Part shown: positions 37,016-54,399 of the stretch, piece by piece
Numbering within the stretch: the first letter of the stretch is position 1
Layout: the number at the start of each line of letters is the position of its first letter
Virus record (IMG/VR): IMGVR_UViG_3300021964_000012
Span: 264,293-328,292 of that record
DNA: 64,000 bases
Strand: one strand, 5' to 3'
Notes under the pieces: model-generated
Databases searched by the model: none
What the model saw: the letters and a program-made list of their open reading frames with translations, nothing else
What the model was told of the DNA's origin: nothing
Program-made: the position numbers and the translations under genes

Positions 37016-37708
37016 TTAACCTAATGAGGCGTTCTCAACTTGTACTAGATCCATGGTTGCAGGAGAAGCAGAACTACCTGATCCACCAACAGCAACTGTG
37101 TCATCTAGAATGTTAAAAAAGTTAATCAATCTTACATTACCACTGAAGTCCACTGAACGTCTACCGCCCATTAGTCTTTCAATACGTACTGCACTTGAAC
37201 CTTCGTCTGTGTATGTTATAGTCATACTACCTGTTGATAAAGCAGCATCAGCTTCGTTTGCAAGTGTACAAATTCCACACTCAGCAGCCGTACCTGAAGT
37301 ACCGGCACCAGCGGCTGCAGTTACAGTAAAAATATGTCCTGCGGCAATTGTTCCTTTACCTGCACCCATTGCTTCCCAGTCGGTATCACCAACTGAAACC
37401 ACTCTTAGTACACTGCCAACCACTGCATTTGCAGGGTCAATAGCGGCAGCATCTAATCTTGATACTTGGTACTTTCTTGCACCTTTTTGCTTGATTATAA
37501 AACCATCACCTTCGGTTGTTACACTTCCACCAGTTGGTCGAATACGACATGTCATTACTGGAAATGTGTAGTCACTGGTGTTAGGATTTCCACCTACTGC
37601 ACCATAGAATAATTCACCAGAAGGTGTTCTTGCGGCACTGTCGTCTCCTGGATTGTTAAAACCAGCATCCTGTGTATCAGATATTTTTATTTTAAGAGGT
37701 CTACCCAT
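37016..37708 (-). CDS. Putative head decoration / structural protein
   Basis: 230 aa directly after the capsid gene, with its own late promoter and AAGGAG RBS; FIIKQKGARKY motif. Confidence 0.6.
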   Translation of the reverse strand: MGRPLKIKISDTQDAGFNNPGDDSAARTPSGELFYGAVGGNPNTSDYTFPVMTCRIRPTGGSVTTEGDGFIIKQKGARKYQVSRLDAAAIDPANAVVGSVLRVVSVGDTDWEAMGAGKGTIAAGHIFTVTAAAGAGTSGTAAECGICTLANEADAALSTGSMTITYTDEGSSAVRIERLMGGRRSVDFSGNVRLINFFNILDDTVAVGGSGSSASPATMDLVQVENASLG

Positions 37709-37797
37709 TTGTTTTCTCCTTTCAAAAAGTTGGCGTTCTAGGCCTACGCGGTTTTGTCCGCATAAAACACTTAATTGTGTTAATAGTATTTATGGTC

Positions 37798-48476: not shown

Positions 48477-48793
48477 TGAACGTTTACACCATTTACGCCG
48501 ATGTAAAAGAAGGTATAGATGCACGAACATTTGTAGCAAACATGAAGCTTTTTCTCGATAAATTGCCCACCATGCATGCCTACAGAATCACAAGAATGAA
48601 ACTAGGATTCCGTTCAATGGATTTGCCAGAGTTTAGAATTGACATGGAATTTGAAAGCATGCAGGCACTTGACGATGCTATGAGTCACGTGGTAGCAAAC
48701 GTTGATGATATTGAAACAGAACATGTAGGTTTCAATCAATGGGTTGATGTAGAAACCATACAACATTTTCTCTATAGAGACTATCCAGACTAA
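48476..48793 (+). CDS. Dimeric alpha-beta barrel-like protein (DUF6614-like)
   Basis: YRITRMKLGF...PEFRIDMEF.SMQALDDA. Confidence 0.6.
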   Translation: MNVYTIYADVKEGIDARTFVANMKLFLDKLPTMHAYRITRMKLGFRSMDLPEFRIDMEFESMQALDDAMSHVVANVDDIETEHVGFNQWVDVETIQHFLYRDYPD

Positions 48794-49389
48794 CACCATC
48801 CATTTATGTAATCTTCCAGCATGATTTGCTTGATACGCAGTTGTTGTAAATTGGTTGGGGCCGCACGCATACGGTTATCTTTGCGATGATGTGTAGTACC
48901 TGCTGGTACGCCTAGCTGTTCTGCTATTTTGTGAACTTCTTTATAGTTATAGATATGTGTATACACAGATTGATCAGGACCTAGTCGAGCAGTGTTAGTT
49001 TCGCAATGATCAGCAACGTTTGGATTTTGTTTATAAACATCAAAATCCTTAATAAAGTTGTTTAGACTAGGTGATTTAATCCATAGATTTTGATTAGCAC
49101 TATTGGTCATGGTATGATAGAAACCACTTACAAACTTTTCTATTGGATCACGCCACAGTGCAATGCGTATGTCAGCTGACATCAGCTCATGTTCAAACTC
49201 TTCAAAATACCTAGACTTATTGTATACACCAGGACACTCGTTTTCAAAACTTCTAAAATGTTGAATTTCGTTTGGATCAGCATTCCATATTGCTTGTGCA
49301 ACATAACTCAACATGGTCGTAGTGCTACATTTATGATTACGCACTATTGCTATCGTTTTGGTATAATGATCAAATTTAATTAAGCCCAT
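48790..49389 (-). CDS. Sulfotransferase family protein
   Basis: 5'-PSB-like HKCSTTT and 3'-PB-like RDPIEKFVSGF; terminal ED(Y) motif. Confidence 0.75.
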   Translation of the reverse strand: MGLIKFDHYTKTIAIVRNHKCSTTTMLSYVAQAIWNADPNEIQHFRSFENECPGVYNKSRYFEEFEHELMSADIRIALWRDPIEKFVSGFYHTMTNSANQNLWIKSPSLNNFIKDFDVYKQNPNVADHCETNTARLGPDQSVYTHIYNYKEVHKIAEQLGVPAGTTHHRKDNRMRAAPTNLQQLRIKQIMLEDYINGWC

Positions 49390-49403
49390 GTGCTTATTTA
49401 ATT

Positions 49404-49855
49404 AGATGTCTAAAGACATCTGTTGCTTCGTTAACACTCAGCAACACTTTTTAGAAGTCCTCATCTAGATAGTTTGGTCATACTTGCCCTACTAAGGGCA
49501 AGTCTAAAAAACCGGTTCTCATCTGAGTTATCCAGTCACTTGAATAAAGAGATTTGCGTATGCAACAGGGGCGGTTGTGCTGTACCCCTTACTCTAGCCT
49601 TGTCTCACAACGGACCGTTCTGTATACCCCTTCAAGCAAAGTATACCAACGTATGGGTTGTATCTGTTTCACAGAGCCCATGTCATTCTAGCCTTAAGTT
49701 AGCTATATCCTTTGACGCACCAGTTCTGTCGGCTACAACTTGTGTTGGCAGACCTCAAGGTGGATCGAGGTTCCTCGATCAAACGATGTCATATTAGCTT
49801 GGGAAATTTAAAAAGTTGCTCTGAGCATAGCTCTAGTAGTGCCTGTGTCATACTT
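49404..49855 (-). ncRNA. Candidate large structured non-coding RNA (family not identified)
   Basis: ~450-nt gap in an otherwise gene-dense genome, higher GC than flanking genes, at least 9 stems and 2 potential pseudoknots. Confidence 0.6.
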
Positions 49856-49857
49856 GT

Positions 49858-50679
49858 TTATGACGTGGTATTGAGTGCCTGTACAAAAATTGTTGTCAAG
49901 TGTTTGTTGGTTTTTATGCCTGGATGCTTGTTGTCTTTGTTGGTATCTATCTTGTTTGATTCCATTGAATTATAAAGATTTAGCCATTTATCTTCACGTA
50001 TTGTACCTGCTTTTTGATATTCGTCGTGCATTTTATTATATAATATTTTATAGTCTTCATCATTTCGTGTTTCTAAATCTAAAAGATCTTGTGTATACGG
50101 AGTAGTTTCTTTTGGAACCTCATACTCCACCTTTTTAAAAAAGTTCTTGTCCCAATTGCACAAGCCGTTTATAAAGCTAATGTTGGTATTAGTTAGTTCT
50201 GCTATACAAGTCAAAATGTTTATATATTCGATCAATTGAACCAACCTATAATGTTCGTGTTCTAATAATATAAATCTATCAAAACAATCTTGTACGTAAT
50301 CACCAGGATATGAAACATTGTTGTGCAAGTTTATCGATCGTTCTTTACCACCTGCACACGAACGTCTTGTTGTATCCCAAGTCTCTAATCCAGGTGACCA
50401 TTCATGTCTCATAGGCGACGTCCATTGTACAAATGCATGGCTATACCTGTTCTTTAACAATGCACTAGCAGTAGTTTGAAATATTCTTAGATTACTGTTG
50501 CCTCCGGTTGCAATGTTGTCTAAAGGTTGACCAAAAAATAATTGATTATGAAGCAAATTTACCCACAGATGATTGCTATGTTTACAGTCACCGAACCCGC
50601 GTTGTCCTTCTTCATTGATCCATTCATCACAGAAACCCACGCCAGCAGTAAAACTACAACCTGAATACAACACAGTCAT
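49858..50679 (-). CDS. SGNH/GDSL-like hydrolase-fold protein
   Basis: SGCSFTAG, NIATGGNSN, VQWT, DNKHPG. Confidence 0.6.
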   Translation of the reverse strand: MTVLYSGCSFTAGVGFCDEWINEEGQRGFGDCKHSNHLWVNLLHNQLFFGQPLDNIATGGNSNLRIFQTTASALLKNRYSHAFVQWTSPMRHEWSPGLETWDTTRRSCAGGKERSINLHNNVSYPGDYVQDCFDRFILLEHEHYRLVQLIEYINILTCIAELTNTNISFINGLCNWDKNFFKKVEYEVPKETTPYTQDLLDLETRNDEDYKILYNKMHDEYQKAGTIREDKWLNLYNSMESNKIDTNKDNKHPGIKTNKHLTTIFVQALNTTS

Positions 50680-51083
50680 CCTTTGAGTATTCCTTTCTGA
50701 TGAACACGTACTCTAATATGCCCGTTATACCAATCATTTGATTCTAACACCTTGTGTGTGAATTGTTCTCTGGCCTCAATGTAACTTAATTCACTTTTGT
50801 TTTTACACCAAAACATTATTTCTCGTTTGAACTTGTCTTTTCCTAATTTTTCTACATCTGCTGAAAGCTCATCACTGCTTCCATAGTATTCCTGCCAGTC
50901 ACTTTCAACAGTGTATCTGCGTTTGTTTGTTCTACCCTTAAGTGGCTTTTTACTACGTTTAAACTGTGTTAGTTTCTTGCCTATGTATTTCCTATCATTG
51001 GTTGTATTTGTTATTATATAAACAAAACCAATCATGCCTTCTGGTATGTCGAGAACTTCTTTGTCTTTATAAAACCAACTCAT
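50676..51083 (-). CDS. Stand-alone GIY-YIG endonuclease
   Basis: GFVYIITN...RKYIGKK, YYGSS, FKREI, E...F...VL...YN. Confidence 0.8.
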   Translation of the reverse strand: MSWFYKDKEVLDIPEGMIGFVYIITNTTNDRKYIGKKLTQFKRSKKPLKGRTNKRRYTVESDWQEYYGSSDELSADVEKLGKDKFKREIMFWCKNKSELSYIEAREQFTHKVLESNDWYNGHIRVRVHQKGILKG

Positions 51084-52837
51084 GCAATATCTATATCCGT
51101 GCTATAACTTGTAAAGCCGTTTTCCTTAACAACCTTCAACAGATTATTTACACGCCCTGCAAGTTCATCTTTATGAGATACCAACCAAATGCTTTTTGCT
51201 CTTTCTCTTGCCATCTTTTTCAGTAATGCAAGTGCAGCCTCAACACCTGATGTGTCCATACCTGAATCAATCATCTCATCAATGAACAGTAAGTTAATAG
51301 CTCCGTACAGGCTCTCCCATACATCACGGAATGCCCAACTCATGCTTATAATAAGTCTGTTGCGTTCACCTCTGCTCAAGTTATCAAAGTCTAAATCTCT
51401 ACCAAGTTCTTGTATTTCAACAGTCAAATCGTTTTGAAATATAACTGTGTGTGGCAATCCTATTCTATCCAAATAGTGTGTAAGCCTTGAATTCAAGTAG
51501 CTGAGATTCTGGTCAATTATACGTTTACGCACAAAACTATCTTTGTTGGTTAGCAGTTTTAGCAAAAAGTCTTGATGATCATGTAGTCTTGTTAGATCAT
51601 TTAGTTTGTCGTATGAAATTTCAGTGGCGGCAGTGGTTTGCATTTCTACTATTTGATCAACGTAAGGATCGGCTTCTGCACGTTTGCTTTGCAACTGTGT
51701 TTCAAGTGAGGATAGAGTTGATCGATGATTGTGTGCATCAGACACGCTATCATAAAAAACTCTTGGTCTCGCTGGTACTTCTTTCTTATCTGCCTTGAGT
51801 GCATCAATTCCTTCCTGTACTTCTCTAAGGAAATCACTTGCCCCATTGTATTCCTCCTGCGCCTTTGCTACATGTTGTTGGTGCGAGTCCATTTGTGTAA
51901 CACTTTGTCCGCAACTGCCACAAGTACCTGATTCCAAACTTTCTAATGCACGTTTAGTTCTGTTTACGTCTTTTTCTGCTCTAGTAACCTGTGCAGTTAG
52001 TGCGGCAATATCTTTTTGTAACTGTGTTTGTGTATTATTTAATTCAGTCCAAATTAGGAGGTCAGCATGAGCTGCTAATTCTGCATCAATATCTACGTGT
52101 GCAAGATCTTCGATAGCAGTTTCAAACTTTTTTACGTCTTCTGCTTTTTTGTTCATCCACAGTGTTTGTCTGCGTTTCAGTGCTTTGACTTGATCACCTA
52201 TTTTATCGTTTGCAGTTTGCAATGCCTTGATGGTCATTTCTTCTTGTTTAATATCATCACGTGTGCGTTTGCTAAGTTCTTTGATCTTGTCAGCACGTTC
52301 ACTGAGTTGTGTTATTCCTAGCAGTTGCTCGATTATCTCTCTTTGATCGTTTTGTTTTAGACTCAAAAACGGTTCAGTGTAGGTGTTTAGTGCCACAAGA
52401 TGTTTGAACATAGTGTGACTCATGCTCAACAGTTTTAGTATAGCACCTTGTGTTTCTCTACTATCACCTTGAGCATAGTCATCTGCTTCTTGTTCACTGT
52501 CATTGATGTAAAACTTTAGTACATTGGGCTTACGTCCACGTTCGATACGATAGCATTGTTCACCAACACAAAAGTCTAAACTAACCATCATGCCTTTTGA
52601 ATTGGTTTTGTTTATGAGATTGTCACGGCGTATGTTTGTAAGTGCTTCACCATAGAGTGCATAACTTAGTGCATTGATTATTGTGGTCTTGCCAGTTCCG
52701 TTACGTGAACCATCACCACCTAAGTCAATGTTTTCACCAAGTACCAGTGTAAGGTCTTGTCTATCAAAGTTAATTGCCTGTGTAGCATTACCCACACTCA
52801 TAAAGTTTTTAACTGTAAGGTCTTTAATTTGAATCAT
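51080..52837 (-). CDS. gp46: Recombination endonuclease ATPase subunit (Rad50/SbcC-like)
   Basis: KNFMSVGN, NGTGKTT, CxxC hook, LSRGE, LFIDE, SHK. Confidence 0.95.
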   Translation of the reverse strand: MIQIKDLTVKNFMSVGNATQAINFDRQDLTLVLGENIDLGGDGSRNGTGKTTIINALSYALYGEALTNIRRDNLINKTNSKGMMVSLDFCVGEQCYRIERGRKPNVLKFYINDSEQEADDYAQGDSRETQGAILKLLSMSHTMFKHLVALNTYTEPFLSLKQNDQREIIEQLLGITQLSERADKIKELSKRTRDDIKQEEMTIKALQTANDKIGDQVKALKRRQTLWMNKKAEDVKKFETAIEDLAHVDIDAELAAHADLLIWTELNNTQTQLQKDIAALTAQVTRAEKDVNRTKRALESLESGTCGSCGQSVTQMDSHQQHVAKAQEEYNGASDFLREVQEGIDALKADKKEVPARPRVFYDSVSDAHNHRSTLSSLETQLQSKRAEADPYVDQIVEMQTTAATEISYDKLNDLTRLHDHQDFLLKLLTNKDSFVRKRIIDQNLSYLNSRLTHYLDRIGLPHTVIFQNDLTVEIQELGRDLDFDNLSRGERNRLIISMSWAFRDVWESLYGAINLLFIDEMIDSGMDTSGVEAALALLKKMARERAKSIWLVSHKDELAGRVNNLLKVVKENGFTSYSTDIDIA

Positions 52838-52854
52838 GTTTTATTATACTATGT

Positions 52855-54399
52855 TTATGTCTTATTTGCAATTGAAAACAAAGCCTTAAACTGCGGAAAG
52901 ATCATGGAAAAAGATTCATTTCTGTGTTTATCGAGTGTCACAGTTCGTTTTGTAAATTCATTTAATTCGTATTGAGTATCTATTGAATTCATAAAGTTTC
53001 TAAGTTCAGCCCAATTTTGTGCTAATTCACATTGGCCTATGTAATCAATGTGATTGTTAATTTGTATGGTTAGATGTTTTTTGTGTACATCTGGTAAAGT
53101 AGTTACACATAGATAACGAGGATCAACGAGAGTAGTGATTCGCAATTGATCAGGTGTAAATAACTCAGTATCAATCCAGTGTGTTTGTAATTTGATTAGA
53201 TTGTCAAGTGTAGGCCAACTTACCGTAGAAGAAATATGTAGATCTACATGTGGTGTGTGACTTTTAATCGCATTGATGTTATCAATTATATCTTGCCATA
53301 CTGTTCCGTGACGCATGTATTCTGCTACTTGACCGCTTGCATCAATACTTGCCCCAACAGATATATTAGAAAACTGTTTCCAATAATCAAATATATTATT
53401 ATTCTTGTATGTCAGTTTACTCAAATTGGTATTGTACAAGAGTTTAATATCAAAATTTTTGACTTCAATCAATTGATCAAGTATACCATAGTGTTCTTCT
53501 GTTATTAAAGGTTCTCCTCCAGCAAAATATATCTTTTCAAGATCATTGGTAAGATAAGGTTTAAGTTTTTCCAAGTTTTTTTGTCTATCTTTCCGGGTGC
53601 TAGAATCGAGACTGATTTTTTCGTAACCAAGTACTGCATCTTTGCCAAATATTTCAACAGTTTCTTGTTGAATACTACTACTGAAGTATTCACTACACAT
53701 TCTGCACTTGAAGTTACAGATATTATTAAGTCTTACATCTAAAAATGTCACCTTTTGCCGACTAACAGAAATAGGTTTAAACTTCTGCCTCATACTTTGT
53801 AAATTGTTGTCTTCTTTTTTGTAACACTCACTACAACATTTTGTACGATAACCCTTAATCATCCATTGTCGTATGTTCTGTGCTTGACTTGAATCTAGTA
53901 TGTCCTCAATTGATTGTTCTTTAATATTTCCAAGAGGATACCTGTGATCAGCAATACAACACGGCAACACATTGCTATCTGTTCCAACATATAAATGATT
54001 CCATAGTTTTTTACATGCAGTATCTTTGTACGACGGAACTGTAACTTTATAGTTTCCTGGATAGACACAACTTGTAAACAATGTTGTATCAGAACTGTAT
54101 ACTGTGTTTACTTCTGCTATTTCAGTTTGTATCTTAGTATTTGGTGTAAGGATTAAAATAAAACAATTTCCAATATCAACTTGATTGACTATTTTTTGTA
54201 GTTCAATTAGTTTTGAACCACATGCATCAATAAAAGGATAATAATCAACACTCCGTTGTACTATTACAATTCTCTCGTTTAGTTTAAAAGTGTCTTTCCG
54301 TAATGCAAGTAACTGTTTCTTAAGTTGTTCTGAACCAGCATCAAATTCAACGGTACCAACTACCTCTATGTCTTTGTCAACATAAGATAACAGATCCAT
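52855..54399 (-). CDS. Radical SAM protein with twitch/SPASM-like Cys domain
   Basis: CNFKCRMC, FAGGEPL, NTN, ASIDA; upstream C...PCC...CxxC cluster. Confidence 0.9.
   Translation of the reverse strand: MDLLSYVDKDIEVVGTVEFDAGSEQLKKQLLALRKDTFKLNERIVIVQRSVDYYPFIDACGSKLIELQKIVNQVDIGNCFILILTPNTKIQTEIAEVNTVYSSDTTLFTSCVYPGNYKVTVPSYKDTACKKLWNHLYVGTDSNVLPCCIADHRYPLGNIKEQSIEDILDSSQAQNIRQWMIKGYRTKCCSECYKKEDNNLQSMRQKFKPISVSRQKVTFLDVRLNNICNFKCRMCSEYFSSSIQQETVEIFGKDAVLGYEKISLDSSTRKDRQKNLEKLKPYLTNDLEKIYFAGGEPLITEEHYGILDQLIEVKNFDIKLLYNTNLSKLTYKNNNIFDYWKQFSNISVGASIDASGQVAEYMRHGTVWQDIIDNINAIKSHTPHVDLHISSTVSWPTLDNLIKLQTHWIDTELFTPDQLRITTLVDPRYLCVTTLPDVHKKHLTIQINNHIDYIGQCELAQNWAELRNFMNSIDTQYELNEFTKRTVTLDKHRNESFSMIFPQFKALFSIANKT

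What the first reader, a model, noticed from the sequence alone, without database searches (positions are those of the whole stretch)
49404..49855. ~450-nt ornate non-coding element with two potential pseudoknots, downstream of a minimal GIY-YIG nuclease
Seen in sequence: the largest non-coding gap in the window is packed with stems: 49404-10/49415-21; 49421-27/49440-46; 49482-90/49495-503; 49567-71/49585-89; 49622-30/49638-46; 49653-57/49677-81 enclosing 49663-67/49671-75 (UGAAA loop); 49718-21/49759-62; 49763-70/49773-80. Two loops have distant complements: loop 49574-79 with 49606-11 (6 bp), and loop 49631-37 with 49538-44 (7 bp). Multiloop-closing pairs are also present (49548-51/49592-95; 49613-15/49682-84). 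Most G.U pairs favour the minus strand, co-oriented with the gp46-GIY-YIG operon, although two stems (49725-49752 and the extension of 49653-81) pair better on plus. Inference: a large phage ncRNA that I cannot assign to a known family. It could be a ribozyme or scaffold, a partner of the GIY-YIG protein, or an R-loop primer at a replication origin.
Basis: partly seen in the sequence, partly recalled or inferred. Interest (0 to 1): 0.9.

Follow-up and report, generated by a model that had tools for sequence, protein, structure and literature searches.

The report
New large pseudoknotted jumbo-phage RNA
The gap holds a real, roughly 400-460-nt, highly folded non-coding RNA with at least two long-range pairings; it is conserved in well over a hundred uncultured large phages and matches no described RNA family, so it is a new large structured phage RNA whose job is still unknown.

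Summary
The 468-nt gap (49390-49857) is non-coding and encodes a structured RNA on the minus strand. I analysed 83 non-redundant copies.

- **Strand:** conserved G.U pairs and GNRA loops (56 sense, 0 antisense) fix it as minus.
- **Core:** a 23-nt hairpin core is nearly invariant.
- **Known families:** no match in Rfam 15, in 50,697 GenBank phages, or in the literature searched.

The carriers are uncultured jumbo myoviruses whose gp46 is 48% identical to Pseudomonas phage PA5oct.

The RNA usually follows gp47-gp46 and a small nuclease, which is either GIY-YIG or an unrelated PD-(D/E)XK enzyme. Five members sit in unrelated neighbourhoods, some behind their own sigma-70-type promoter. It is therefore a self-contained RNA gene, not a partner of the GIY-YIG protein. 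I found no origin signature.

Two new features are unexplained: a co-varying alternative pairing that competes with hairpin P11, and two repeat modules that evolve in concert.

My best guess is a trans-acting folded RNA particle, either a protein scaffold/decoy or an RNA-only assembly. Function is not shown.

The parts
49404..49867 (-). Whole RNA element as seen in this window. RNA coordinate r = 49858 minus the window position. The conserved core P1-P13 is r67-454; a clade-specific leader lies 5' of it.
   Evidence: nhmmer and blastn homology to 143 of 148 fetched loci. Covariance model R1 finds the central domain in 83 of 83 non-redundant members.
49847..49864 (-). Leader hairpin GUCAUA/UAUGAC. 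It holds the stop codon of ORF273 and is conserved only in the close clade.
   Evidence: Read from the sequence and alignments. Not tested for covariation.
49713..49791 (-). 5' domain: P1 (49788-91 with 49713-16) enclosing hairpin P2 (49764-80), P3 (49759-62 with 49718-21) and the P3 arm.
   Evidence: Cognate against non-cognate duplex test, 0 of 2000 permutations for each of P1, P2, P3 and the P3 arm. Alignment.
49688..49706 (-). P4: a short variable stem closing a conserved 11-nt loop (CUAAC NNN AGG).
   Evidence: Stem co-varies (UAG/CUA, UUG/CAA, AUG/CAU, GAAG/CUUC). The loop is conserved.
49653..49681 (-). P5 with the nearly invariant 23-mer (49656-49678): an inner GAAA-capped hairpin plus a UACAA bulge.
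   Evidence: The outer two pairs are canonical in 83/83 and 82/83 members, with GC, CG, AU and UA all common. The 23-mer is kept in members found through a different 17-mer.
49615..49652 (-). P6: a long hairpin whose loop is the 5' strand of pseudoknot PK2.
   Evidence: Cognate -12.15 against non-cognate -5.95 kcal/mol, 0 of 2000.
49574..49611 (-). PK1: 49606-11 pairs with 49574-79, which lies inside the loop of hairpin P8 (49584-89 with 49567-72).
   Evidence: 80-83 of 83 canonical pairs with up to 5 pair types. P8 carries conserved G.U pairs.
49548..49595 (-). P7 (49592-95 with 49548-51) closes a junction holding P8 and P9. P9 (49554-66) is a variable hairpin capped by GNRA.
   Evidence: P7 has 75-82 of 83 canonical pairs with 3-4 pair types. 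P9 loops are GNRA (GAAA 18, GUAA 11, GCAA 7 among them) in 39 of 83 members.
49539..49546 (-). 3' strand of PK2. It pairs with the P6 loop at 49631-49638.
   Evidence: Cognate -4.46 against non-cognate -0.99 kcal/mol, 0 of 5000. Sequences differ widely between members. It ranks third among all window pairs in the unbiased scan.
49519..49539 (-). Repeat module 1 (GUGAC ... ACUC-AG-AUGAG).
   Evidence: Evolves in concert with module 2: the dinucleotide before AUGA is identical in 60 of 61 scorable members. A simple 4-bp stem is not supported.
49484..49502 (-). P11 hairpin (CUUGCCC/GGGCAAG).
   Evidence: Cognate -13.40 against -8.88 kcal/mol, 0 of 2000. Pair table.
49599..49606 (-). Alternative partner of the 5' strand of P11 (49498-49504). 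It mirrors the 3' strand of P11.
   Evidence: Cognate -2.92 against -1.71 kcal/mol, 0 of 5000. It shares a 5-mer with the P11 3' strand in 48 of 83 members, against 19% for non-cognate pairs.
49460..49483 (-). Repeat module 2 (UAUGAC ... AUCU-AG-AUGAG).
   Evidence: See module 1.
49404..49445 (-). P12 (49440-45 with 49425-30, with a UGAG/CGAA internal motif) and the terminal hairpin P13 (49414-21 with 49404-11).
   Evidence: P13: 0 of 2000, and 8 pairs with 2-4 pair types each. P12: 1 of 2000. No U-tract follows, so it does not look like a terminator.

Best explanation
**What it is.** This is the gene for a free-standing, compactly folded non-coding RNA of about 390 nt, plus a leader that varies between clades.

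**How it is made.** It is transcribed from the minus strand early or mid infection. The transcript arises either by read-through from the gp47-gp46-nuclease operon or, in some phages, from its own sigma-70-type promoter.

**Its fold.** The RNA forms three linked domains (P1-P4, P5-P9, and modules/P11-P13). Two pseudoknots (PK1, PK2) hold them together, and a third co-varying contact competes with hairpin P11.

**How I think it works (inferred).** It acts in trans as a folded particle, not as a cis-regulator of a neighbouring gene. Its sequence-invariant unpaired surfaces are the 23-nt GAAA hairpin with its UACAA bulge, the 11-nt P4 loop, and the two concertedly evolving AUGA modules. I read these as docking sites for an outside partner. 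That partner is most likely a protein bound at two equivalent sites (an RNP scaffold or a decoy), or else further copies of the same RNA.

**Shown:** the RNA family, its strand, its helices and pseudoknots, and its independence from any one neighbour.
**Inferred:** action in trans, the partner, and the timing of expression.
For: - **A real, conserved family.** At least 120 IMG/VR contigs carry it, and 83 copies are non-redundant. The RNA is 83-95% identical in DNA where the adjacent ORF199 protein is only 77-80% identical.
- **Structure.** Covariation supports P1-P9, P11-P13, PK1 and PK2.
- **Strand.** Conserved G.U pairs and GNRA loops place it on the minus strand.
- **Not coding**.
- **Not tied to one gene.** Upstream genes include GIY-YIG, PD-(D/E)XK, ORF273 and others. 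Downstream genes are mostly convergent. Five members lie in unrelated neighbourhoods.
- **Own promoter in some members.** L057 has TTGACT-N17-TATAAT directly before P1. L103 and L056 have a similar promoter and a divergent upstream gene.
- **Read-through in others.** P1 starts within 12 nt of the upstream ORF end in 50 of 83 members.
- **Two equivalent sites.** The two modules share the same variable dinucleotide in 60 of 61 members, and no complementary partner exists inside the RNA.
- **Invariant unpaired core**.
- **Precedent.** Pairings first taken as tertiary contacts in ROOL and GOLLD turned out to join separate RNA copies (bioRxiv 10.1101/2024.12.08.627333).
Against: - There are no expression data of any kind, so neither the 5' and 3' ends nor the stability of the RNA are known.
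- No partner protein co-occurs consistently within the loci. Most members come from one syntenic phage lineage, so synteny says little.
- The alternative P11 pairing would also fit a regulatory switch.
- The near-invariant core would also fit a catalytic centre.
- The thermodynamic z-score is modest and similar on both strands.
Confidence: 0.45

Rival explanations
1. It is a new large ribozyme. It might cut itself out of the operon transcript or catalyse another reaction, with the invariant 23-nt hairpin/bulge and PK1 forming the active site.
For: - Size, multiple pseudoknots, GNRA loops and invariant unpaired nucleotides are typical of large ribozymes.
- In 50 of 83 members the RNA abuts the upstream stop codon, so it must be released somehow if it acts alone.
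Against: - No match to any ribozyme model in Rfam, even at permissive thresholds.
- No conserved sequence at the 5' boundary that would mark a cleavage site.
- Some members have their own promoter and need no processing.
- No assay was possible.
Confidence: 0.15
2. It is a cis-acting element of the mRNA it sits on. It could be a 3' UTR stabiliser or insulator at a convergent gene boundary, or a conformational switch controlling a neighbouring gene.
For: - It usually lies at the end of the gp47-gp46-nuclease operon and faces convergent late baseplate genes.
- Two mutually exclusive helices both co-vary (P11 and its alternative), as in riboswitches.
Against: - Flanking genes and their orientation vary, and five members are in unrelated contexts.
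- No terminator-like site is present.
- About 390 nt with more than 12 helices and an invariant core is far more than a stabiliser or insulator needs.
Confidence: 0.1
3. It is the RNA partner (guide or cofactor) of the small nuclease encoded just upstream, as omega-RNA is for IscB.
For: A small nuclease gene lies immediately upstream on the same strand in 61 of 83 members, and within two genes in about 71.
Against: - The nuclease is either GIY-YIG (PF19835) or an unrelated PD-(D/E)XK enzyme (PF24608) annotated as a resolvase. This looks like non-orthologous replacement inside a recombination module.
- Five members have no nuclease in the locus.
- In this window ORF273 intervenes.
- The A/C polymorphism of the 23-mer does not track nuclease type.
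- No variable guide-like segment was seen.
Confidence: 0.07
4. It is a structured primer or pre-primer RNA at a replication origin, in the manner of ColE1 RNA II or the T4 origin R-loops.
For: - It sits at the border between the recombination/replication genes and the late baseplate genes.
- Some leaders carry repeated AGGCAC- or AAAGCAC-like motifs.
Against: - No iterons and no AT-rich unwinding element beside it in the window.
- GC skew follows gene orientation, with no turn at 49.5 kb.
- Pseudoknots and an invariant hairpin are not features of known origin R-loop RNAs (my own knowledge).
Confidence: 0.05
5. The conservation partly reflects selfish DNA. The invariant 23-mer would be the target of the neighbouring free-standing homing endonuclease, or the element itself would be mobile.
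For: - SegE-like GIY-YIG genes are classic free-standing homing endonucleases that sit next to their conserved targets (Pfam name; PHROG hits to homing endonucleases).
- The RNA occurs in unrelated neighbourhoods.
Against: - The flanking helix of the 23-mer co-varies at the RNA level.
- No resistant or sensitive site variants correlate with presence of the nuclease.
- No terminal repeats or target-site duplications were seen.
- This would not explain more than 12 co-varying helices.
Confidence: 0.05

Closest known systems
GOLLD and ROOL RNAs (large ornate RNAs, often in phages and prophages)
   Same: - Several hundred nucleotides long, with many co-varying helices.
- Long-range loop pairings and conserved GNRA or A-rich loops.
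- Phage-borne, with no known function.
- Covariation-detected 'tertiary' pairings that may be intermolecular.
   Different: - No sequence or structure match to their Rfam models.
- Smaller, at about 390 nt.
- Carried by uncultured jumbo myoviruses next to gp46/gp47 rather than near tRNA genes.
- Multimerisation is untested.
phi29 prohead (packaging) RNA
   Same: A phage-encoded, early-transcribed structured RNA that acts in trans as a particle through loop-loop contacts (my own knowledge).
   Different: pRNA is 120-174 nt and has a different fold. There is no homology, and no link to packaging genes here.
HEARO / omega-RNA and other nuclease-associated structured RNAs
   Same: A large structured RNA encoded directly next to a small nuclease gene.
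   Different: - The neighbouring nuclease is interchangeable (GIY-YIG or PD-(D/E)XK) or absent.
- No guide segment.
- No model match.
ORF-less group I intron beside a free-standing homing endonuclease (collaborative homing in T4-like phages)
   Same: A pseudoknotted RNA of about 400 nt with GNRA loops, next to a GIY-YIG gene in a T4-like gene order.
   Different: - It does not interrupt a gene. The flanks are separate and often convergent genes.
- The pseudoknot topology differs from P3/P7/P8.
- No Intron_gpI match.
Protein-sponge RNAs such as CsrB
   Same: Repeated short motifs presented on one structured RNA. Here there are two co-evolving AUGA modules and several AUGAC copies.
   Different: Only two clear modules, embedded in a rigid pseudoknotted fold with an invariant core. 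The binding protein is unknown.

Membership tests
Any family in Rfam 15 (4227 models) | Reaches the family's gathering score with its covariance model. | tested here: not met
   - Gathering-score scans found nothing in the element: the window, 15 loci, and L151/L152.
- Permissive E-value scans of the window region and of 16 members gave only unrelated noise.
Group I intron | Interrupts a gene whose flanks join into one reading frame. | tested here: not met
   The upstream ORF ends with its own stop codon. The downstream gene is usually convergent or unrelated.
Group I intron | P3-P7 pseudoknot enclosing P8, with P4-P6 lying between the P3 and P7 strands. | tested here: not met
   PK1 joins a strand to the loop of a simple hairpin only about 30 nt away, with no P4-P6 or P8 equivalents in place. 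No Intron_gpI hit.
Group II intron | Domain V/VI match (RF00029) with the catalytic triad hairpin. | tested here: not met
   No hit at E up to 10. The GAAA hairpin of P5 has a 5-nt bulge and no AGC triad helix (read from the sequence).
RNase P RNA | Match to the RNase P models and a long-range P4 helix with its universal sequences. | tested here: not met
   No Rfam hit. The unbiased scan for co-varying pairings found no end-to-end P4-like helix.
tmRNA | tRNA-like ends and a tag reading frame. | tested here: not met
   ARAGORN finds no tmRNA or tRNA in the window. No Rfam tmRNA hit in the element.
GOLLD / ROOL / OLE / HEARO | Homology to the family's covariance model. | tested here: not met
   No hits.
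GOLLD / ROOL-like self-assembling RNA (works-like, not membership) | Forms defined homo-oligomers without protein. | not testable with these tools
   Only indirect hints: a competing co-varying helix and PK2 as a loop-to-linker pairing.
Riboswitch or cis-regulatory leader | Constant position upstream of one gene family on the same strand. | tested here: not met
   Downstream genes are mostly convergent and of several families. Five members lie in unrelated contexts.
Nuclease guide/partner RNA (omega-RNA-like) | Obligatory co-occurrence with one nuclease family. | tested here: not met
   Immediately upstream: GIY-YIG in 40, PD-(D/E)XK in 21, others or none in the rest of 83.
Origin primer RNA (ColE1 RNA II / T4 R-loop origin) | Adjacent iterons or an AT-rich unwinding element, and a skew switch. 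| tested here: inconclusive
   None was seen in the window. T4-like phages show weak skew and the window covers only 64 of 328 kb.
Intrinsic terminator | GC-rich hairpin followed by a U tract. | tested here: not met
   No terminator-like site in 48600-51200.

The most novel reading that the evidence does not exclude
Uncultured jumbo phages make, early in infection, a previously unknown class of large RNA machine. It would be either a new large ribozyme or a self-assembling RNA-only particle, in which PK2 and/or the alternative P11 pairing link separate copies. The two concertedly evolving modules would act as its binding or active surfaces.
Probability: 0.25. Interest if true: 0.9.

Novelty: categorically new. 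Interest (0 to 1): 0.8.

Why it matters
Large, intricately folded RNAs with conserved pseudoknots are rare. Almost every one whose role has been solved turned out to be a ribozyme, a ribonucleoprotein core or, recently, an RNA-only cage.

- **Data already in hand.** This family is abundant in environmental jumbo phages and comes with enough natural variation (83 distinct copies here) to define its fold.
- **Testable features.** It has an almost invariant 23-nt core, a competing helix, and two modules that change in step.
- **What it would open up.** If studied, it could reveal a new RNA function in phage infection. It would also add a sizeable new target for RNA structure determination.

"Categorically new" here means no homology to any described RNA family. 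The general category of large ornate phage RNAs of unknown function already exists (GOLLD, ROOL).

Tried and rejected
- **Known RNA family: rejected.** Rfam at gathering and permissive thresholds gave nothing for the window or for more than 30 homologues. ARAGORN found nothing.
- **Protein-coding or pseudogene: rejected.** Stops occur in all frames of all members, and indels are not in threes.
- **Intron: rejected.** What looked like conserved 'exon' flanks in L022-type loci are the 3' end of the upstream PD-(D/E)XK gene and the reverse-complemented 3' end of a convergent gene.
- **Homologue in cultured phages: none found.**
  - blastn of three members and of the 23-mer against 50,697 GenBank phages found nothing.
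  - nhmmer and the covariance model found nothing near gp46 of PA5oct or Phosso (best E 0.57).
- **Cellular homologue: essentially none.** There were two hits in 185,579 species genomes. One is a 6-kb contig in a Flavobacterium MAG that carries the whole element. The other is only the 23-mer hairpin, in a GC-rich alphaproteobacterial contig, and may be chance.
- **Origin features: none**.
- **Homing-endonuclease immunity variants: none**.
- **Palindromic kissing loops: not conserved.** The CUUAAG in the P4 loop and AUCUAGAU in module 2 do not stay palindromic across the family.
- **Literature: nothing found.** Searches by topic and by the 23-mer sequence found no description.
- **Not attempted.** I did not type a full consensus structure into the model builder, to avoid long typed strings. 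Model R1 therefore carries only P5 and P8. The other helices were tested with anchor-based and cognate/non-cognate scripts instead.

Full report
**1. The region.**
The window comes from a 328-kb IMG/VR contig. The gap 49390-49857 lies between two minus-strand genes.
- ORF273 (49858-50679) has no Pfam family.
- ORF199 (48790-49389) is weakly sulfotransferase-like.

Further upstream on the same strand lie a 135-aa SegE-type GIY-YIG nuclease, a gp46/SbcC-like ATPase, a radical-SAM/SPASM protein and a gp47/SbcD-like phosphoesterase. The gap is richer in G+C (0.42-0.46) than its flanks (0.30-0.38). It is the largest non-coding stretch of the window once an unconserved 107-aa plus-strand ORF is set aside.

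**2. Is it more than chance?**
Folding energy alone is weak evidence: z = -2.55 on the minus strand and -2.32 on the plus strand. The comparative evidence settles it.
- Relatives of ORF199 led to homologous non-coding DNA that is 83-95% identical to the window, while the neighbouring protein is only 77-80% identical.
- A 17-mer from the element found 17 true loci.
- nhmmer detects the element in 143 of 148 fetched loci.
- 126 copies are full length, and 83 remain after removing copies that are 96% or more identical.
- All six frames carry stop codons in every member, and length differences between members are not multiples of three.

**3. Structure.**
I use RNA coordinates r = 49858 minus the window position. 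I tested helices in three ways.
- *Pairs counted at fixed offsets from invariant anchors*.
- *A cognate versus non-cognate duplex test.* Each helix strand is paired with its partner from the same genome or from other genomes. Three unrelated window pairs served as negative controls, and all were flat.
- *A covariance-model alignment counted by the pair-counting tool*.

Helices supported:
- P1, P2, P3 and its arm, P4, P5, P6, P7, P8, P11 and P13: each 0 of 2000 permutations.
- P12: 1 of 2000.

Details:
- *P5* has its outer two pairs canonical in 83/83 and 82/83 members, with GC, CG, AU and UA all frequent.
- *PK1* (r247-251 with r280-284) is canonical in 80-83 of 83 members, with up to five pair types.
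- *PK2* joins the P6 loop to r312-319. Its sequences differ widely between members: CUUGAA/UUCAAG, CUAGUA/UACUAG, GACUGUUA/UAACAG, and a 10-bp version in L107. Cognate energy is -4.46 against -0.99 kcal/mol, 0 of 5000 permutations.
- *The tool-based count* for P5 and P8 gives 99.9% paired cells and covariation 0.334 against 0.102 shuffled (0 of 500). The slid controls reach at most 0.133.
- *An unbiased scan* of all window pairs returned these helices and both pseudoknots as its top signals.

The closing pair 49613-15/49682-84 is not.

**4. Strand.**
P8 keeps G.U in 69 of 83 members and U.G in 81 of 83. On the other strand these would be C-A mismatches. GNRA tetraloops cap predicted hairpins 56 times on the minus-strand reading and never on the plus-strand reading. 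The RNA is therefore the minus strand, co-oriented with the gp47-gp46 operon.

**5. Conserved, unpaired features.**
- A 23-nt stretch inside P5 (window 49656-49678) is almost invariant. It comprises a GAAA-capped 5-bp hairpin plus a UACAA bulge. This also holds in members found through a different probe.
- The 11-nt P4 loop (CUAAC NNN AGG) is conserved.
- Several AUGAC and AGAUGA motifs are conserved.

**6. Two new observations.**
- *An alternative to P11.* The segment r252-259 mirrors the 3' strand of hairpin P11 and can pair with the P11 5' strand.
  - Triples such as ACAAG/CUUGC/GCAAG, GUGAA/UUCAC/GUGAA and GCGAA/UUCGC/GCGAA change together.
  - Cognate energy is -2.92 against -1.71 kcal/mol, 0 of 5000 permutations. 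The same-sense control is flat.
  - Two mutually exclusive helices therefore both co-vary. This fits a switch, a folding intermediate, or a strand swap between RNA copies.
- *Two modules that evolve in concert.* The repeat modules (window 49519-49539 and 49460-49483) carry the same variable dinucleotide before AUGA in 60 of 61 scorable members: AG/AG 31, GG/GG 21, AC/AC 6, GA/GA 2.
  - Their tails match as well.
  - No complementary column exists anywhere in the RNA.
  - This is parallel covariation, not complementary. It points to two equivalent sites read by one outside partner.

**7. Who carries it, and where.**
The window's gp46 protein is closest (48% identity) to Pseudomonas jumbo phage PA5oct, then to Sinorhizobium phage Phosso and Agrobacterium phage Atu_ph07. 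Carrier contigs reach 250-328 kb.

No cultured phage carries the RNA.
- blastn of three members and of the 23-mer against 50,697 GenBank phages found nothing.
- nhmmer and the covariance model found nothing beside gp46 in PA5oct or Phosso.

Among 185,579 species genomes there are only two hits.
- A 6-kb contig in a Flavobacterium MAG carries the whole element.
- A GC-rich alphaproteobacterial contig carries only the 23-mer hairpin.

**8. Gene context**.
- *Upstream on the same strand:* gp47, gp46, then a small nuclease. Immediately upstream this is GIY-YIG (PF19835) in 40 of 83 members, or an unrelated PD-(D/E)XK enzyme (PF24608, in a PHROG annotated as a Holliday-junction resolvase) in 21.
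- *Downstream:* usually convergent baseplate-hub genes.
- *Spacing:* P1 begins within 12 nt of the upstream ORF end in 50 of 83 members, so many copies must be co-transcribed with the operon.
- *Exceptions:* five members (L103, L056, L042, L142, L057) share no neighbouring gene family with the rest.
  - L057 has a consensus TTGACT-N17-TATAAT promoter directly before P1.
  - L103 and L056 have a similar promoter behind a divergent gene.
- *In the window itself:* the promoter-like site in the leader is no better than chance, and there is no terminator-like site.

The RNA is thus a self-contained gene that needs neither the GIY-YIG protein nor gp46 as a neighbour.

**9. What it is not.**
- It matches no Rfam 15 family, at gathering or at permissive thresholds, in the window or in more than 30 relatives.
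- It is not a tmRNA.
- It is not an intron. The apparent conserved flanks are the ends of two separate genes.
- It shows no origin signature: no iterons and no skew turn.
- No homing-endonuclease immunity pattern is present.
- Literature searches by topic and by sequence found no description.

**10. How it most likely works.**
*Shown:* a conserved, minus-strand, pseudoknotted RNA with invariant unpaired surfaces, which can be moved between genomic contexts.

*Inferred:* it acts in trans as a folded particle. The invariant hairpin/bulge, the P4 loop and the two co-evolving modules would serve as contact surfaces. The contact could be a protein bound at two equivalent sites (a scaffold or decoy), or other copies of the RNA. 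In ROOL and GOLLD, covariation-detected 'tertiary' pairings proved to be intermolecular. I put this reading at 0.45.

Rivals:
| Rival | Confidence |
|---|---|
| New ribozyme | 0.15 |
| Cis-acting switch or 3' UTR element | 0.10 |
| Partner of the adjacent nuclease | 0.07 |
| Origin primer | 0.05 |
| Selfish-DNA target | 0.05 |

None can be decided without expression data and biochemistry.

**11. Verdict.**
The interpretation as an unassigned large phage ncRNA is right. The GIY-YIG and origin ideas are not supported. This is a new RNA family with no detectable relative. The nearest category is the large ornate phage-borne RNAs (GOLLD, ROOL), to which it is not homologous.

Noticed in passing
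window 37706-37782 (-): A full-length match to the Rfam freshwater-2 RNA motif (64.6 bits, gathering score 49.9). The same motif occurs in related locus L140 (473-546). This hints at a freshwater origin.
   Followed up: no
L152 2348-2374 (-), alphaproteobacterial MAG contig of 469 kb: The 23-mer hairpin module occurs alone, flanked by its own 5-bp helix (GCGGG/CCCGC), in GC-rich DNA that looks like bacterial coding sequence. About 0.3 chance matches were expected in the collection, so it may be coincidence or an independent use of the module.
   Followed up: partly
L150 8410-9425 (Sinorhizobium phage Phosso) and L149 8017-9531 (Pseudomonas phage PA5oct): Both cultured relatives have a 1-1.5-kb stretch beside the resolvase gene near gp46, either unannotated or holding only tiny ORFs, and rich in hairpins. 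It is not homologous to this RNA (best covariance-model E 0.57) but could hold an analogous RNA.
   Followed up: partly
window 52855-54399 (-): A radical-SAM/SPASM protein gene is inserted between the gp47-like and gp46-like genes. Related radical-SAM genes (cluster c7) sit between gp46 and the nuclease in other members.
   Followed up: no
leaders upstream of P1: window 49838-49843; L103, L054, L115, L087, L136: Leaders that are otherwise unrelated carry one to several copies of AGGCAC/UGGCAC. L136 has about eight copies of AAAGCAC/CAGCAC within 200 nt. I could not tell whether this is a DNA-level or an RNA-level signal.
   Followed up: partly
window 49847-49856 and 49477-49486: The 10-mer CAAGUAUGAC (RNA sense) occurs twice: once in the leader hairpin and once at the 3' side of P11.
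   Followed up: no
L042, L067, L034, L107: A divergent subtype keeps P5, P6 and the 3' domain but replaces the P7-P8-PK1 region with unrelated sequence (alignment A3).
   Followed up: no
window 49858-50679 (-) and 48790-49389 (-): ORF273 has no Pfam or PHROG family and occurs upstream of the RNA in only three of 83 members. ORF199 is weakly sulfotransferase-like and follows the RNA only in the close clade. In L012 a 471-aa gene is inserted between them.
   Followed up: partly
window 49425-49445 (-), hairpin P12: P12 holds a conserved UGAG/CGAA internal motif that could form tandem sheared G.A pairs. The AUGA modules resemble box C/D-like UGAUGA/UGA arrangements. A kink-turn-like fold was not tested.
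   Followed up: no
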